Source: Prasinococcaceae sp. CCMP 1430
Lineage: Eukaryota; Plantae; Prasinodermophyta
Reading direction: 5' to 3'
DNA: 16,299 nucleotides
Assembly (NCBI GenBank): GCA_013416795.1
Contig: RQSC01001337.1
Span: 97,631-113,929 of the forward strand
The position numbers were made by a program, and so were the translations under genes. The notes under the pieces were generated by a model. The model was given only the letters and a program-made list of their open reading frames with translations. It was not told the DNA's origin and searched no databases. This document shows, one piece after another, positions 940 to 14,219 of this stretch. The first letter of the stretch is position 1. Every line of letters starts with the position of its first letter.

Positions 940-1547
940 NNNNNNNNNNNNNNNNNNNNNNNNNNNNNNNNNNNNNNNNNNNNNNNNNNNNNNNNNNNNN
1001 NNNNNNNNNNNNNNNNNNNNNNNNNNNNNNNNNNNNNNNNNNNNNNNNNNNNNNNNNNNNNNNNNNNNNNNNNNNNNNNNNNNNNNNNNNNNNNNNNNNN
1101 NNNNNNNNNNNNNNNNNNNNNNNNNNNNNNNNNNNNNNNNNNNNNNNNNNNNNNNNNNNNNNNNNNNNNNNNNNNNNNNNNNNNNNNNNNNNNNNNNNNN
1201 NNNNNNNNNNNNNNNNNNNNNNNNNNNNNNNNNNNNNNNNNNNNNNNNNNNNNNNNNNNNNNNNNNNNNNNNNNNNNNNNNNNNNNNNNNNNNNNNNNNN
1301 NNNNNNNNNNNNNNNNNNNNNNNNNNNNNNNNNNNNNNNNNNNNNNNNNNNNNNNNNNNNNNNNNNNNNNNNNNNNNNNNNNNNNNNNNNNNNNNNNNNN
1401 NNNNNNNNNNNNNNNNNNNNNNNNNNNNNNNNNNNNNNNNNNNNNNNNNNNNNNNNNNNNNNNNNNNNNNNNNNNNNNNNNNNNNNNNNNNNNNNNNNNN
1501 NNNNNNNNNNNNNNNNNNNNNNNNNNNNNNNNNNNNNNNNNNNNNNN
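940..1547. other. Assembly gap (N run, 608 nt)
   Basis: Continuous Ns. ORFs spanning it are artefacts. Confidence 0.99.
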
Positions 1548-2988: not shown

Positions 2989-3730
2989 NNNNNNNNNNNN
3001 NNNNNNNNNNNNNNNNNNNNNNNNNNNNNNNNNNNNNNNNNNNNNNNNNNNNNNNNNNNNNNNNNNNNNNNNNNNNNNNNNNNNNNNNNNNNNNNNNNNN
3101 NNNNNNNNNNNNNNNNNNNNNNNNNNNNNNNNNNNNNNNNNNNNNNNNNNNNNNNNNNNNNNNNNNNNNNNNNNNNNNNNNNNNNNNNNNNNNNNNNNNN
3201 NNNNNNNNNNNNNNNNNNNNNNNNNNNNNNNNNNNNNNNNNNNNNNNNNNNNNNNNNNNNNNNNNNNNNNNNNNNNNNNNNNNNNNNNNNNNNNNNNNNN
3301 NNNNNNNNNNNNNNNNNNNNNNNNNNNNNNNNNNNNNNNNNNNNNNNNNNNNNNNNNNNNNNNNNNNNNNNNNNNNNNNNNNNNNNNNNNNNNNNNNNNN
3401 NNNNNNNNNNNNNNNNNNNNNNNNNNNNNNNNNNNNNNNNNNNNNNNNNNNNNNNNNNNNNNNNNNNNNNNNNNNNNNNNNNNNNNNNNNNNNNNNNNNN
3501 NNNNNNNNNNNNNNNNNNNNNNNNNNNNNNNNNNNNNNNNNNNNNNNNNNNNNNNNNNNNNNNNNNNNNNNNNNNNNNNNNNNNNNNNNNNNNNNNNNNN
3601 NNNNNNNNNNNNNNNNNNNNNNNNNNNNNNNNNNNNNNNNNNNNNNNNNNNNNNNNNNNNNNNNNNNNNNNNNNNNNNNNNNNNNNNNNNNNNNNNNNNN
3701 NNNNNNNNNNNNNNNNNNNNNNNNNNNNNN
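2989..3730. other. Assembly gap (N run, 742 nt), followed by A17 at 3731-3747
   Basis: Continuous Ns. The gap probably hides the 5' exon(s) of the eL42 gene. Confidence 0.99.
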
Positions 3731-8485: not shown

Positions 8486-10707
8486 ATGCCGGCCGCGCCG
8501 CCCCGTCCCGCGCGGGCGCGCAGCTACGGGGACTACGACGATTACGGCGACTACGACGACTACGCCGCGCCCAAGCCCAAGCCCAAGCCCAAGCCGAAAC
8601 CCGCGCCCAAGCCGGCGCCCAAGCCGGCGCCCACGCCAAAGGCGCGCGATGAGGGCGAGGCGTCGGGGAGCGGTGCGTGCGCGGCGCGCTGGACGACCAA
8701 GATGCGCGCAGCGGCCCCCGCGGCCAAGCGCGCGTGCGGGCGCCCGCCGAGGCGGCGCGTACCCTCCCTCTTCCCCCCTACTTGGAACCCACCCACCCCC
8801 GGCGCGCGCTGACGTCCTCTCAATGCCCTGTCCGTCCCTCGATGACGCGCGGGCGCGCGCGCAGGCCCGGCTGAGGCGCTCGCAGCCGAGCTCGAGTCGG
8901 CGTCGCTGGGCGGTAAGGGGGCGCAGGCTCAGCAGGCGCAGCGCGTGTCCGCGGCGGCCGCCGCGGCCAACGTGAGCGAGTACGCGCCGACGGCCGCCGA
9001 CCGGCGCGCCGCCGAGGCGGCCGCGGACGGAGCGTCGGGTGCGGGAGTCGAAGCGTCAATCGTTGTGCTCGGTCACGTGGACGCAGGAAAGAGCACGCTG
9101 GTGGGGCACCTGCTCGCGCAGACGGGCGCCGTGAGCGCGCGCGACGTCGACAAGCTGCGACACCATGCGTCCAAGTCGGGGCAGGGCGCGAGCGCGCTCG
9201 CCTGGATCATGGACGCCACGGAGGGCGAGCGCGGGCGCGGCGTGACCGCCGACGTGGCGATGACGCACTTCGACGCCGCGCCGGGCGTGCGATGCGCTCT
9301 GCTCGACGCGCCAGGGCACAGGGACTTCGTTCCAAACATGATCGCGGGCGCCGCGCAGGCCGACGTGGCCGTGCTGGTCGTCGACGCGAGCCCGCAGGCG
9401 TTCGAGCGGGGCTTCGAGCGAGGCGGCCAGACGCGCGAGCATGCGGCGCTCGCCCGCGCGCTGGGCGTGTCGCGATGCGTCGTGGCCGTCAATAAGATGG
9501 ACCGCGCCGGCTGGGACTGCGCGCGCTTCGACGCCATCCGGCAGCACCTCGCGCCCTACCTGGCGTCGGTGGGCTTTGGGGCCAAGGCGTGCGCGTGGGT
9601 TCCTCTGAGCGGCCTCGCGGGTGACAACCTCACCCGGCCGCCCGAAGGCGCCGAGGCAGCAGCAGCGCTCGAACGATGGTGCGTCCCTACGCGTGCACGT
9701 TTGCTCTTGCGGTGTGCGTTTGCACGCTCTGTGCACGCGCGCGACAACCGCGCGCCGTCCCCAGGAATGCTCTCGGTGTCTGACGCCAGCCGCCCCCCCA
9801 CCACCACCACCACGCTCGGCACATGTCTGTGGCCCTTACAGGAGCAGCGAGGTGGACACGCTCACGGAAGCGCTCGCGTCGGCCGCGCGTGCCGTTGCCT
9901 CGGCGCGCACGCCCGAGGATGCGCTCCTGCCGCTGCGATTGCCGGTGGCAGCTGCCGTGGACAAGAATGAAAGCCGCGATATTGGCACGGGCTGCGCCGG
10001 CAAAGTCGCCGCTGGGGCGGTGGCGCCGGGCCAGAAGGTGCGGACGCCCGCTCGGCGCGCGCACGCAAGACGCACCACGCGCGCGCCGCCCGCGCGCGCT
10101 CTGACAAGGCGCGCGCTCTTTCCCCGGCATGCCCGCCTGCCCTGCTGCTTTCCTGCCTGCCTTACATGCGCGTCGTGTGAAGGTTGTGGTGCTTCCTGGC
10201 GGCGTGGATGCCGTGGTCAAGGTGGTGCGACGGTGCGGCGCCGCCGCGCCCGCTGCGGCGGCGGGCCAGTCTGCCGAGATTGGTCTTTCTCCGGCCGGCG
10301 GCGCAGACGCGGCAGCGCTCGGGGCGGCGCTCCGACGCGGCGCGGTCGTCTGTGCGGGCGCGGCGCCGGCACCGGCGGCTGTCAGGGTCGAGTGCAGGGT
10401 GCAGACGCTCGAGCTCGCACTGCCGCTGCTCAAGGGCGCGAGCGCAACGCTCCACGTGGCCGTGGGCGCCGCGCCGTGCGTGGTGTCGCGGCTCGTCGCG
10501 CTGCACGACCCCTCCACGAACGAGGTCACGCGCGCGCGCCCCCGAGCGGTCGCCTCGCGCTGCGCGGCGACGATCGAGGTCGAGCTCGTCGAGGGCGAGC
10601 GCATCGTGTGCGAGGAGTACGCGCGCTGCCGCTCGCTCGGGCGGCTGTGCCTGCGCGACGGCGGTCGCACCCTCGCCGTGGGCATCGTCACCAAGGTGCT
10701 CGACTAA
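8486..10707 (+). CDS. HBS1: HBS1-like translational GTPase (eEF1A/eRF3 family), ~573 aa
   Basis: Exons are 8486-8672, 8865-9678, 9842-10037 and 10183-10707, totalling 1722 nt in frame. Introns are GTGCGT..CAG, GTGCGT..CAG and GTGCGG..AAG. Motifs are G1 GHVDAGKS, ERGRGVTADVA, G3 DAPG, GGQTREH, G4 NKMD, G5 SGL and the C-terminal LGRLCLRDGGRTLAVGIV. The YDD-rich low-complexity N-terminus, AW..D...ER.RGVT.DV and GQTREHA.L.R.LGV favour HBS1 over eEF1A or eRF3. Confidence 0.88.
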
Positions 10708-11665: not shown

Positions 11666-12700
11666 AGGGAGGAGCAGCGCTCGGCGGCGGGCGGGACCGG
11701 CACGCGAACGCGCGCATGGCGCAGGGGGGGTGGGGGCCGAGAGGCGTGGAGAGGGGGGACGCGACAAGCAGGCGGCCAGGGTGGCGGCGCGTGGCGGCGC
11801 GCGGGCGGCGCGGACGCCAAGGAAAACGCGAGGCCGCGCGACCCGCAGCAGCAGGGGCAGGGGCAGGGGCAGGCGACCTACAGGCCGCAGAAGGGTGAGC
11901 GTCGCGGCCGCGAGGGCCGCGGTCCCTCTCGCCAGGAACGCAAGGGCGGGCGCGGCGCCGGCGCCGCGCCCCAGCCGCCGCGCCCGGGGCTGCGCGTGCG
12001 CCCTCCTTCACAGAAGAGGAACACCGTGCAGTTCACCCCCACGCACGCGCGGCCCGACGTGCGCGTCGTGTGCGGCGATGCGTCCGCTCGCACGTACGGC
12101 ACCCGTCCCACGCCGTGGGACGTCGTGCTCGTGCCAGGCTTCGCCGCGGCGCGCGACGACCTCAGCGTGTACGAGAAGCTCCTCGCCGAAATCGAAGGCA
12201 CGGGCCGCGATGACATTTTCTGCCTGTGGCACGGCGACTCGCACTACATCGCCAACGACCGCAAGGGCTGGAAGAACAACGGCTCGTGCCCAACCTTCGA
12301 CGCGCTCATCAAGCGCATCGAGGTGTACTTTGGCATGACCGTCAACGCCACGCGGCTGAACTGGTACCGGGACGACTCGGAGTGGAAGCCTTTCCACTTT
12401 GACAGAGCGGCCTTCACACCCGGATGCCCGCAGAACTTCACAGTGGGCATCAGCATCGGTCCCTCAACTCGTGACATCGCCTTTGAGCACGCCGAGAAGG
12501 GCGCCGAGCGCGGCATTGGCGGCGTCACGGTGTCCGTCCCGCAGCCGAACGGATCGATGTACGCCTTCTCGGAATACGTCAACATCGAGTGGCGGCACGG
12601 CGTGCCGCAGGCGCCAGCGCACGCCCGCTCGGACAAGGAAGGCCGAATCTCGATCATCGCATGGGGCCAGGTGGAGCTCGACAGGCGCGGCGACGAGTGA
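11666..12700 (+). CDS. AlkB-like 2OG-Fe(II) dioxygenase with Gly/Arg/Gln-rich N-terminus (5' end uncertain)
   Basis: The frame is open from 11666 to TGA at 12698-12700. It contains NATRLNWY, HFD (His codon 12395, HxD), distal WRHGV (His 12596) and RISIIAWG (Arg 12644), consistent with the DSBH Fe/2OG ligands. There is no in-frame ATG near the start (see findings). Confidence 0.82.
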   Translation, partial: REEQRSAAGGTGTRTRAWRRGGGGREAWRGGTRQAGGQGGGAWRRAGGADAKENARPRDPQQQGQGQGQATYRPQKGERRGREGRGPSRQERKGGRGAGAAPQPPRPGLRVRPPSQKRNTVQFTPTHARPDVRVVCGDASARTYGTRPTPWDVVLVPGFAAARDDLSVYEKLLAEIEGTGRDDIFCLWHGDSHYIANDRKGWKNNGSCPTFDALIKRIEVYFGMTVNATRLNWYRDDSEWKPFHFDRAAFTPGCPQNFTVGISIGPSTRDIAFEHAEKGAERGIGGVTVSVPQPNGSMYAFSEYVNIEWRHGVPQAPAHARSDKEGRISIIAWGQVELDRRGDE

Positions 12701-12822
12701 TGGGGCCCCCGTGATGCGATCGCGCGAGGCTGTGCGCGTCACTGCAATGCGTCCCACCGCGTACACACATCTGCGATATATTACACAATGCGTCCGCGCC
12801 CGCGCCAGCGAGCTCGCCTCTG

Positions 12823-13960
12823 TCACCACTCCTCGACGCGGCAGTTCGGTATGGAGAGGGGCGCGAGCCATTCGCCCTGTGCAGCGTGTGCTCTCGCCGC
12901 TGCTCCCACGGAGGCGCTCGCCCGATCAAGCCCGTCTGCAGCGCAGCTCCCGCAGAGCATCGCGGGCAGGAGCGCGGCGCAGCGCCCGCACGTGCCGTAC
13001 ACGCGCCCGGCGACAGCGGATGCGCCCGACTCGCTACCCCCTCCTCTTCGCTTCCCGCGCTTCGAGGCGGCATCACCGAAGGCCCACCACTCGCACATGC
13101 CCTCGGGTTCCACCCCCGCGCGCGCCGCCGCGCGCACAAGTTTGGCAGCGGCGCAGTCGCCAGCGCCGCCGGGTACAGCTGCTGGCGCGTACACGGCTTC
13201 GAGCGTCAGCGGGGTTCGATCGTCGCCTTCACCGAGGTCGTACGACTCTCGGATACGTGCGAGCAGCGCTGTGCTCAGAGCACGGCGCTCGGCGCGTAGG
13301 CGCTCAGCGCCGGCAGTGTCGCCTGCACCGTCCGTCGCCTCGAGGCGCTCGCTCAGTGCGCGCGTCCGCGCCATCACCGCTCGGTACTCGCTCGTGTGAT
13401 GCGTGACGCGCGCGAGCGGCGGCGCCCACCCCTCGAGGTACCAGCTGCCGAGCGCGGGCTCTGAGGAGGATGCTGTCACGCACGACGTAGCGGGGCCGGG
13501 AGGTAACTGGCCTGAGAACGCCTTCAAAGTCACCCGCTCGCCAGTCTCTGTCGCGGAGGCGGCGGGGGATGGGGCAGGGACACGTGCAGCGGGCGAAAGT
13601 GCTCGCGTCAGCACGCGACGGACCACGTAACTACGCGTGCGCGTAGAACGCGCGCAGAACGCGCGCCCACCCACCTCGGTGAGTCCCCACGAGCACGCCG
13701 AGCATTTTGCCACCGTAGCTGCCAGCCATGGTGCTGGCGCTTGCCCCTGGCACGCGCTCCACCCCCGCATCGGTGGCCGTGTCGACATCTAGCCCGCCTC
13801 GTGCGCGCACGCGTGCCATGAGGTCCGTGGCGGCGTCGAGCGCGGCCTGCGAAAGGGGTACGCCGCGCGCACCGGCACAGGACGCACACGTGCCGTCCGC
13901 GCCGTACGCGTACTCGTGCCCGAGCTCGGCGAGCCGTGGCGCGCTGCCGTCGCGCGCCAT
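12823..13960 (-). CDS. Protein resembling the N-terminal extension of long bacterial RluA-family pseudouridine synthases, without the catalytic domain (~336 aa)
   Basis: Exons are 13960-13675 and 13547-12823 (1011 nt). The phase-1 intron 13674-13548 is GTGGGT...CTGAC...CAG. Splicing gives GGKMLGVLVGTHRETGERVTLKAFSGQL...EGWAPPL, then RRALSTALL, PGGAGDCAAAKL, MCEWWAFG and VYGTCGRCAALLPAMLCG. These match, in order, the motifs I recall from long RluA proteins (GKMFGVL, LKAFSG, GWVPP, GAGECAAPKL, EFWWG, YPAC..KC..IL..ML.G). Confidence 0.72.
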
Positions 13961-14147
13961 CGTCCCAGTCGCAGGGCGGCGAGCCCAGCTGCGTGGCCTC
14001 GCGCCGCGCGTCGGTCACCGGGCGGCCGACGAAGGAAGGGAATGGGGCGGGGGGTGCGGGGAGGGGAAGGGAAGGGAGGGTGCGCCCCGCCCGCGCGCAC
14101 TGGCGCGGTACACACCTCCGCATCCACGCTCAGCACCGCAGGACAAT

Positions 14148-14219
14148 CAAAACAAAAACAAAAACAAAAACAAAAACAAAAACAAAAACAAAAATAAAAT
14201 CAAAATCAAAATCAAAATC
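14148..14219 (+). repeat. Composite hexamer microsatellite (CAAAAA)7-TAAAAT-(CAAAAT)3, copy 2
   Basis: Read directly. It has the same two units in the same order as 2724-2762. Confidence 0.92.

What the first reader, a model, noticed from the sequence alone, without database searches (positions are those of the whole stretch)
12823..13960. Stand-alone RluA N-terminal extension with no pseudouridine-synthase domain, in a eukaryote
Seen: a spliced ORF carries the ordered motif set of the long-RluA N-terminal region and stops about 40 codons after MLCG. It lacks the catalytic HRLD motif, and only 122 bp remain before the convergent AlkB-like stop, so there is no room for that domain. Known from recall: in bacteria such as cyanobacteria and Bacteroidetes this region precedes the RluA catalytic domain and its function is uncharacterised. 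Inference: a bacteria-derived (EGT or HGT), intron-bearing gene has kept this module alone, implying an independent activity. The conserved Cys residues (GDCAA and C..C) hint at metal binding or a catalytic fold.
Basis: partly seen in the sequence, partly recalled or inferred. Interest (0 to 1): 0.76.

Follow-up and report, generated by a model that had tools for sequence, protein, structure and literature searches.

The report
Algal stand-alone TrcP-type RNA cytidine deaminase
A marine green alga carries a two-exon gene for just the cytidine-deaminase half of the bacterial tRNA editor TrcP, with its catalytic residues intact and no pseudouridine-synthase half, which points to an unstudied family of likely C-to-U RNA editors in algae.

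Summary
A two-exon minus-strand gene (13960..12823, one 127-nt GT-AG intron) encodes a 336-aa protein. It carries the ordered motifs of the N-terminal region of long RluA proteins and stops 41 codons after MLCG, 122 bp from a convergent AlkB-like gene. No pseudouridine-synthase (PUS) domain occurs anywhere in the window.

It is the N-terminal half of TrcP (Kimura et al. 2022, PMC9553926), a zinc cytidine deaminase (CDA) with an inserted long helical domain. That half alone converts tRNA-Tyr C32 to U. The algal protein keeps the three zinc cysteines (C227, C282, C285) and the catalytic glutamate (E248). It lacks about 84 profile positions of the helical domain and the whole PUS domain.

It belongs to a PUS-free clade in which every member with known context is eukaryotic (marine picoalgae, Scenedesmus, an MMETSP transcript). 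Three of three bacterial "stand-alone" genes examined are instead split operons with an adjacent RluA gene. The gene is under purifying selection.

My reading: a new eukaryotic stand-alone variant of a known enzyme, most likely a C-to-U RNA (tRNA) editor. Activity and substrate are untested. The scan had not noted this family before.

The parts
13675..13960 (-). Exon 1 (aa 1-95 plus 1 nt). It holds the start codon, the N-terminal helix LSQAALDAATDLMARVRA (13799-13855) and the first core strand GKMLGVLV (13688-13711).
   Evidence: It aligns to profile nodes 18-118 of the TrcP-type HMM together with the start of exon 2. It is conserved in P0003.
13548..13674 (-). Spliceosomal intron, 127 nt, GT...AG, phase 1.
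   Evidence: Read from the sequence. The intron-less ortholog P0003 spans the junction without a gap. There are 3 substitutions in 127 nt against a 99%-identical strain, compared with 11 in 1008 nt of CDS. No RNA read across the junction was obtained.
12823..13547 (-). Exon 2 (aa 96-336 plus the stop at 12823-12825). It holds the rest of the deaminase core, a short helical hairpin and a C-terminal tail.
13234..13401 (-). Short helical hairpin (aa 145-200), a remnant of the TrcP long helical (tRNA-binding) domain. About 84 profile positions of that domain are missing.
   Evidence: HMM nodes 119-202 have no counterpart in the protein. Two helices, 143-161 and 167-190, appear in the AF2 model of the ortholog. 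The KAFSG-to-GDC spacing is 121 aa here against a median of 186 in PUS-fused proteins.
13153..13155 (-). Cys227 in GDCAAAK, the predicted first zinc ligand (equivalent of TrcP C282).
   Evidence: Invariant in 33 eukaryotic-clade sequences and at least 90% conserved in 150 family members. Role taken from PMC9553926.
13090..13092 (-). Glu248 in CEWW, the predicted catalytic glutamate (equivalent of TrcP E303). It lies 21 residues after the first Cys, as in the bacterial proteins.
   Evidence: for the role
12979..12990 (-). Cys282 and Cys285 (CGRC), the predicted second and third zinc ligands (equivalents of TrcP C324 and C328). The spacing is CxxC here, against Cx3C in bacteria.
13006..13077 (-). 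Lineage-specific Gly/Ser/Arg-rich insert (aa 253-276) between the Glu strand and the CxxC helix.
   Evidence: It appears as alignment gaps against P0003 and the bacterial proteins.
12826..12948 (-). 41-residue C-terminal tail after MLCG. The motif W-L-x-P...P-x-x-R-x-x-E-W is shared only with ortholog P0003. Its function is unknown.
   Evidence: pLDDT is low in the model of the ortholog. It does not match the PUS part of the TrcP-type profile.
12701..12822 (.). 122-bp interval to the convergent AlkB-like gene; it holds the 3' UTRs.
   Evidence: A metatranscriptome contig, 12687-12914, is collinear with the genome across the stop codon.

Best explanation
The gene encodes a stand-alone eukaryotic member of the TrcP N-terminal-domain family, a zinc-dependent cytidine deaminase.

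Proposed mechanism, inferred from TrcP: Cys227, Cys282 and Cys285 hold a zinc ion that activates water. Glu248 shuttles the proton. A cytidine flipped out of an RNA loop is hydrolytically deaminated to uridine. The most likely substrate is a tRNA anticodon-loop cytidine (position 32 in TrcP). Because no pseudouridine-synthase domain is fused or encoded nearby, the product would stay U unless an unlinked enzyme acts afterwards.

The tRNA-gripping long helical domain of TrcP is reduced here to a short hairpin. Substrate recognition must therefore differ from that of the Vibrio enzyme.

Shown here: homology, conservation of the catalytic residues, absence of the PUS domain, purifying selection, and membership of a eukaryotic clade. 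Inferred, not shown: enzymatic activity, zinc binding and substrate.
For: Homology: the TrcP-type profile gives E = 1.2e-41 in two collinear segments. BLASTP of exon 2 gives 2e-13 (Pseudanabaena), 8e-11 (Vibrio campbellii 'RluA family pseudouridine synthase') and 4e-16 (Desulfobaculum stand-alone protein).

Link to TrcP: the Pseudanabaena N-terminal region matches Vibrio, Pseudoalteromonas, Photobacterium and Bacteroidales proteins at up to 4e-36. These are the taxa that Kimura et al. list as TrcP holders.

Catalytic residues: the Cys/Glu/Cys/Cys set is invariant in 33 eukaryotic-clade sequences and at least 90% conserved in 150 family members.

Published function: the TrcP N-terminal half alone converts C32 to U in vitro, binds zinc, and needs C282, C324, C328 and E303.

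Selection: NG86 dN/dS is 0.35 and LWL85 0.28 against the TARA ortholog. Against a 99%-identical strain there are 5 nonsynonymous and 6 synonymous changes, all nonsynonymous ones at unconserved positions, while the intron carries 3 changes in 127 nt.

Expression: two seawater metatranscriptome contigs match exon 2 and the 3' end at 100% identity. A family member is a complete ORF in an MMETSP transcript.
Against: No activity, zinc or substrate data exist for any eukaryotic or stand-alone member.

The second and third Cys are spaced CxxC rather than Cx3C, and the near-invariant Pro of CAPK is Ala here.

The structure was modelled on the ortholog P0003, not on the window protein, because the spliced sequence could not be passed by reference.

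The intron was not confirmed by RNA reads, and the metatranscriptome contigs could derive from contaminating DNA.

V. cholerae TrcP itself was not compared directly.
Confidence: 0.6

Rival explanations
1. Two-component C-to-pseudouridine editor. The algal deaminase works with an unlinked RluA-type pseudouridine synthase encoded elsewhere in the genome, so the end product is pseudouridine, as with TrcP.
For: In bacteria the module can be a separate polypeptide next to its own PUS gene. All three bacterial 'stand-alone' loci examined have a 223-226-aa PseudoU_synth_2 gene immediately downstream, overlapping or within 7 bp (L015, L016, L017). From established knowledge, eukaryotes have RluA-family enzymes that make pseudouridine 32 (the yeast Pus8/Pus9 type).
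Against: No PUS domain lies in the window or within 3-6 kb of the gene in any of seven eukaryotic loci. In vitro, the TrcP N- and C-terminal halves added as separate proteins did not make pseudouridine. The rest of the genome could not be searched here.
Confidence: 0.2
2. An active deaminase with a different substrate (mRNA, rRNA, organellar RNA, DNA, or a free nucleoside or antibiotic, as for blasticidin-S deaminase), after loss of the tRNA-binding helical tip.
For: About 84 profile positions of the tRNA-binding long helical domain are missing. The closest solved fold is a small-molecule deaminase. Lineage-specific basic inserts (aa 253-276) could create a new binding surface.
Against: The whole family, fused or split, is tied to an RNA pseudouridine synthase in bacteria. 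Other eukaryotic-clade members keep a full-length helical domain, with spacing of 184-275 aa. A hairpin rich in Arg remains in this protein.
Confidence: 0.15
3. A non-catalytic remnant: an RNA-binding or regulatory protein, or a decaying pseudogene left after loss of the PUS half.
For: The motifs are altered (CAAAK, CxxC), the helical domain is truncated, and there are low-complexity inserts and a disordered tail.
Against: All four catalytic residues are retained and invariant across the eukaryotic clade. dN/dS is about 0.3. The reading frame is intact in two strains and in a 55%-identical ortholog with the same C-terminus. The intron evolves faster than the exons.
Confidence: 0.05

Closest known systems
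TrcP of Vibrio cholerae (tRNA-Tyr C32-to-U-to-pseudouridine editor; Kimura et al. 2022, PMC9553926) and its fused homologs in cyanobacteria, Bacteroidales and Myxococcota
   Same: Homologous N-terminal module. It has the same order of motifs, the same three Cys plus Glu, the same 21-residue spacing from the first Cys to the Glu, and a helical insertion at the same place in the deaminase core.
   Different: There is no RluA/PUS domain. About 84 positions of the long helical domain, including the region of the basic tRNA-binding tip, are absent. The Cys pair is CxxC instead of Cx3C. The gene is eukaryotic and spliced, and the protein has an extra 41-residue tail.
Bacterial split versions: a CDA-like 'hypothetical protein' plus an adjacent RluA gene (e.g. 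Desulfobaculum bizertense WP_233815482.1 / WP_233815484.1)
   Same: The deaminase module is a separate polypeptide of 220-335 aa with a short helical insertion. BLASTP against exon 2 gives 4e-16 over 212 residues.
   Different: The bacterial genes are translationally coupled to a PUS gene immediately downstream. The algal gene has no PUS nearby and falls in a separate, PUS-free eukaryotic clade.
Blasticidin-S deaminase and homotetrameric cytidine deaminases (CDA fold)
   Different: No sequence similarity is detectable, even profile against PDB. The catalytic Glu is not in a [HC]AE motif. There is a large helical insertion, and the presumed substrate is RNA.
ADAT2/ADAT3 of Trypanosoma brucei and the unidentified plant cytosolic tRNA-Ser C32-to-U32 deaminase
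   Same: The predicted reaction is the same (C-to-U in a eukaryotic tRNA anticodon loop). The plant enzyme is still listed as unknown and is not ADAT1/2/3 (review PMC11802342).
   Different: ADAT2/3 are canonical TadA-type deaminases, unrelated in sequence. No land-plant homolog of the present family was seen or could be searched for here.

Membership tests
TrcP N-terminal domain family (CDA plus long helical domain) | Significant sequence homology to the N-terminal half of TrcP-type proteins | tested here: met
   Profile of 46 fused proteins: E = 1.2e-41. BLASTP 2e-13, 8e-11 and 4e-16. The library-wide profile search returned both fused and unfused relatives. V. cholerae TrcP itself was not available; the link runs through Vibrio campbellii and the taxa listed in PMC9553926.
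TrcP N-terminal domain family (CDA plus long helical domain) | Three conserved zinc-ligand cysteines (TrcP C282, C324, C328) | tested here: met
   C227, C282 and C285 are present and sit in invariant columns. The spacing of the last two is CxxC rather than Cx3C.
TrcP N-terminal domain family (CDA plus long helical domain) | Catalytic glutamate (TrcP E303) | tested here: met
   E248 lies 21 residues after the first Cys, as in the Pseudanabaena protein and in TrcP's published numbering. It is invariant in the eukaryotic clade.
TrcP N-terminal domain family (CDA plus long helical domain) | Cytidine-deaminase-like fold of the globular part | tested here: inconclusive
TrcP N-terminal domain family (CDA plus long helical domain) | Full long helical domain with the basic tRNA-binding tip | tested here: not met
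   HMM nodes 119-202 are absent, with only 6 residues between the two matched segments. A short two-helix hairpin remains.
TrcP (complete C-to-pseudouridine editor) | C-terminal RluA-family PUS domain in the same polypeptide | tested here: not met
   No PF00849 hit. No match to profile nodes 317-534. No PUS signal anywhere in the window.
TrcP (complete C-to-pseudouridine editor) | C-to-U editing activity on tRNA position 32 | not testable with these tools
   This needs tRNA sequencing or an enzyme assay.
RluA family pseudouridine synthase (PF00849) | PUS catalytic domain with the HRLD Asp motif | tested here: not met
   Database labels such as 'tRNA pseudouridine32 synthase' on PUS-less homologs are carried-over annotations.
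Canonical cytidine/deoxycytidylate deaminase superfamily by sequence | [HC]-A-E ... P-C-x-x-C signature and detectable sequence similarity | tested here: not met
   No Pfam or NCBIfam deaminase hit. A 150-sequence family profile finds no deaminase in the PDB at E up to 10. The Glu is 21 residues from the first Cys, not adjacent to it.

The most novel reading that the evidence does not exclude
Stand-alone TrcP-type deaminases are the eukaryotic enzymes behind cytosolic tRNA C32-to-U32 editing in the green lineage. That activity is known in Arabidopsis tRNA-Ser, but its enzyme is still unidentified. This algal gene would then be a first handle on that enzyme class, acquired from bacteria and stripped of its pseudouridine-synthase half.
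Probability: 0.12. Interest if true: 0.85.

Novelty: new variant of a known kind. Interest (0 to 1): 0.6.

Why it matters
TrcP is the only enzyme known to perform C-to-pseudouridine editing. It was described as always carrying both halves and as confined to bacteria.

This gene shows that the deaminase half exists alone in eukaryotes. It is spliced, conserved and under selection, and it sits in a clade that includes abundant marine picoalgae and Scenedesmus.

That gives a concrete, testable candidate for C-to-U RNA editing in algae, where no such enzyme is assigned. It also offers a possible lead to the unknown plant tRNA C32 deaminase.

The work further shows that many bacterial 'hypothetical proteins' are the deaminase half of split TrcP operons, and that PUS-less homologs are mislabelled in databases as pseudouridine synthases. 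No Pfam or NCBIfam model exists for the module.

Tried and rejected
Searches that found nothing:
- Pfam and NCBIfam on both exons.
- PDB by sequence with exon 2 and with a 150-sequence family profile.
- ESM-Atlas feature search gave only sub-threshold 'hypothetical protein' clusters.

Structure searches:
- Foldseek against the PDB gave nothing significant.
- The wide VIA search was swamped by helical-hairpin matches.
- Only the second-look search showed deaminases.

The tail as a relic of the first strands of the PUS domain: I noticed that 'PLSIPNCR' resembles 'LLSIPGR' of RluA enzymes. With all filters off, the TrcP-type profile does not align the tail to any PUS node, so the idea is unsupported.

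RNA confirmation of the intron: no joints were seen. Two runs that contain the intron are probably DNA. The metatranscriptome contigs cover only 12687-12914 and 12921-13092.

Other limits:
- The search for related loci with the four-row alignment failed for lack of conserved columns. The three-row alignment found one cyanobacterial locus.
- Land-plant homologs: none were named among the hits, but the tools could not query plant proteomes, so this is not evidence of absence.
- Direct comparison with V. cholerae TrcP and modelling of the window's own spliced protein were not possible, because the spliced sequence has no reference and was not typed in.
- Synteny with the ortholog: the gene downstream of P0003 is not the AlkB-like neighbour.

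Full report
**1. What is in the sequence**

On the minus strand an ATG at 13960 opens a reading frame that runs to a GT donor at 13674. A 127-nt intron (GTGGGT...GACAG) ends at 13548. The frame then continues from 13547 to a stop at 12823-12825.

- GKMLGVLV (aa 84-91)
- VTLKAFSGQ (101-109)
- GDCAAAK (225-231)
- CEWW (247-250)
- CGRCAALLPAMLCG (282-295)

The protein ends 41 residues later. The next feature is a convergent + strand ORF ending at 12700, 122 bp away. It weakly resembles ALKBH2/ALKBH3 (5.6e-5 against PDB sequences). Upstream of the ATG lies an (AAAACA)n microsatellite at 14149-14217. The window is about 70% G+C and contains two runs of N, at 940-1547 and 2989-3730.

**2. Is the gene model right, and is the gene alive?**

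An intron-less ortholog from a TARA metagenome (P0003, 310 aa, 55% identity over 295 aligned codons) reads through the proposed splice junction without a gap. It ends with the same W-L-x-P...R-x-x-E-W tail followed by a stop. A 99.15%-identical TARA contig (L013) allows a strain comparison. The CDS carries 11 substitutions in 1008 nt, 5 nonsynonymous at unconserved positions and 6 synonymous. The 127-nt intron carries 3.

Against P0003, dN/dS is 0.35 by NG86 and 0.28 by LWL85. dS is saturated, so these figures are rough, but they lie clearly below 1.

Two seawater metatranscriptome contigs match 12687-12914 and 12921-13092 at 100% identity. The first is collinear with the genome across the stop codon. 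No read across the intron was found, so splicing rests on comparative evidence only.

No PUS domain exists in the protein, in any frame of the window, or in the flanks of the orthologs. Transcripts splicing onward to a catalytic domain are therefore very unlikely.

**3. What the module is**

Pfam, NCBIfam and PDB sequence searches are blank. A full-library profile search found 1201 relatives, 886 of them at E <= 1e-10. Among the best 150, 53 carry an RluA-type PUS domain and are mostly 440-600 aa. The other 99 do not, and are mostly 180-420 aa.

A Pseudanabaena locus fetched from genome contigs encodes a 555-aa protein with the module at residues 1 to about 345 and PF00849 at 358-505. Exon 2 aligns to it at 2e-13 plus a collinear 2e-6 segment. 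That cyanobacterial N-terminus in turn matches 'RluA family pseudouridine synthase' genes of Vibrio, Photobacterium, Pseudoalteromonas, Bacteroides, Parabacteroides, Prevotella and Phocaeicola. Exon 2 matches the Vibrio campbellii protein directly at 8e-11.

These are the taxa in which Kimura et al. (Nat Commun 2022, PMC9553926) found homologs of TrcP. That paper reports the following about the N-terminal half of TrcP:
- It is a cytidine deaminase domain with an inserted long helical domain.
- It binds zinc.
- It needs C282, C324, C328 and E303.
- It uses water as the oxygen donor.
- On its own it fully converts C32 of tRNA-Tyr to U.
- A basic patch at the tip of the helical domain is required for tRNA binding.

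**4. How the algal protein compares**

A 534-node profile of 46 fused proteins matches the spliced protein in two collinear pieces: nodes 18-118 to aa 28-168, and nodes 203-316 to aa 175-301, with E = 1.2e-41. Nodes 119-202 (the outer part of the helical domain) and 317-534 (linker and PUS) have no counterpart.

The four catalytic positions are C227, E248, C282 and C285. They are invariant in an alignment of 33 eukaryotic-clade sequences and at least 90% conserved across 150 family members. The Cys-to-Glu distance of 21 residues is the same as in the bacterial proteins and in TrcP's published numbering. The Cys pair is CxxC here and in P0003, against Cx3C in bacteria.

**5. Who else has it, and in what form**

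In a maximum-likelihood tree of 155 domain sequences (quick IQ-TREE search, SH-aLRT support), the window protein pairs with P0003 (support 100). The pair lies in a 34-row clade (support 93) with no PUS-fused member.

Every member of that clade whose context I could inspect is eukaryotic:
- L003: neighbours include a WD40 protein, an ATP-synthase c-subunit family protein and a TPR-like protein. The homolog itself is split by an intron.
- L005: adaptin and PTH2 neighbours.
- L006: V-ATPase E and ubiquitin, on an 879-kb contig.
- L007-L009: bilin reductase, UBX and sialyltransferase-like genes in a compact genome. This protein is indexed in 177 blocks of the assembly collection, including marine metagenome contigs.
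- L018: a MULE transposase neighbour.
- Scenedesmus sp. KAF8062629.1, and a complete ORF in an MMETSP transcript.

L010-L012, which hold P0215, also have eukaryotic neighbours (kinesin and a sugar transporter), but P0215 was not one of the tree's rows. None of the eukaryotic loci has a PUS domain within the 3-6 kb flanks.

The bacterial 'stand-alone' genes are different. In Desulfobaculum bizertense (L015) and in two metagenomic loci (L016, L017), the module is followed immediately by a separate 223-226-aa PseudoU_synth_2 gene, overlapping or 7 bp away. These are split TrcP operons. Structural relatives in the ESM Atlas are likewise Thermodesulfobacteriota 'hypothetical proteins'.

Kimura et al. 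stated that all the homologs they found had both halves. The split bacterial form and the unlinked eukaryotic form therefore extend that picture. The papers found with 'TrcP' as a search term that I checked do not mention either form.

Some eukaryotic-clade members keep a full-length helical domain (KAFSG-to-GDC spacing of 184-275 aa, against 121 here). Shortening therefore appears to be secondary in this lineage.

**6. Origin**

The family is overwhelmingly bacterial. The eukaryotic sequences form one clade nested among bacterial ones, which is consistent with acquisition from bacteria. However, the eukaryotic clade, the cyanobacterial fused clade and the bacterial split-gene clade meet in poorly supported forks, and the tree is unrooted. 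I cannot say whether this was cyanobacterial EGT or another HGT, or whether the PUS half was lost before or after transfer.

**7. Most likely function**

I commit to an active zinc cytidine deaminase that edits C to U in RNA, most probably in a tRNA anticodon loop, leaving U unless an unlinked pseudouridine synthase follows. I put membership in the TrcP-NTD family at about 0.9, catalytic competence at about 0.7, a tRNA substrate at about 0.5, and position 32 specifically lower than that.

The missing helical tip is the main argument that substrate choice differs from Vibrio TrcP. The N-terminus (34 residues before the conserved helix, containing several acidic residues) does not look like an organellar transit peptide. 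That is inspection only, not a prediction tool.

Cytosolic C32-to-U32 editing of tRNA-Ser in Arabidopsis still has no assigned enzyme, according to a 2024 review (PMC11802342). A green-lineage TrcP-type deaminase is an attractive candidate. I found no land-plant member and could not search for one, so this stays a low-probability lead.

**8. Verdict**

The stand-alone, eukaryotic, metal-binding and catalytic readings are right. 'Uncharacterised' is wrong. The origin is unresolved.

It is a new eukaryotic stand-alone variant of a known enzyme module, not a new kind of system. The earlier notes of this scan do not mention this family.

Noticed in passing
L015:2597-3937; L016:3001-4688; L017:3001-4646: Bacterial 'hypothetical proteins' homologous to the TrcP deaminase half are followed immediately by a separate 223-226-aa RluA/PseudoU_synth_2 gene (overlapping, or 7 bp apart). 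These are split two-gene versions of TrcP. Kimura et al. reported that every homolog they found carried both halves.
   Followed up: partly
window 11996-12700 (+): The convergent neighbour resembles ALKBH2/ALKBH3 dioxygenases (phmmer against PDB, 5.6e-5), although Pfam is blank. ALKBH3 acts on m1A and m3C in RNA including tRNA (my own knowledge). The adjacency to a putative tRNA C deaminase may be coincidence. The TARA ortholog P0003 has a different downstream gene.
   Followed up: partly
P0173, P0177, P0178, P0181, P0235, P0238, P0088: IMG labels several PUS-less homologs, some in the eukaryotic clade, 'tRNA pseudouridine32 synthase/23S rRNA pseudouridine746 synthase'. The label seems to be carried over from fused TrcP-type proteins and is wrong for these sequences.
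   Followed up: no
P0038 (Scenedesmus sp. PABB004 KAF8062629.1, 1194 aa): The deaminase module sits at the C-terminus (aa 880-1192) of a long predicted protein with an ankyrin-repeat hit at 763-804. This may be a real fusion or a merged gene model.
   Followed up: no
13-row CxxC subclade in the tree (P0007, P0155, P0022, P0029, P0063, P0073, P0075 and others): A well-supported eukaryotic subclade (SH-aLRT 100) has CxxC spacing and a long low-complexity insert between the Glu strand and the Cys pair. The window and P0003 also have CxxC but fall outside this subclade, so the one-residue deletion may have arisen twice.
   Followed up: no
window 14149-14217: An (AAAACA) x 11.5 microsatellite lies about 190 bp upstream of the start codon. 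In the 99%-identical TARA contig L013 the similarity ends near 14016, at that contig's own end, so the repeat region could not be compared between strains.
   Followed up: no
window 8945-9970 (+): An ORF with a strong GTP_EFTU domain hit (3.5e-42), probably one exon of a translational GTPase gene.
   Followed up: no
window 940-1547 and 2989-3730: Runs of N (assembly gaps). Any statement that a feature is absent from the window excludes these stretches.
   Followed up: yes
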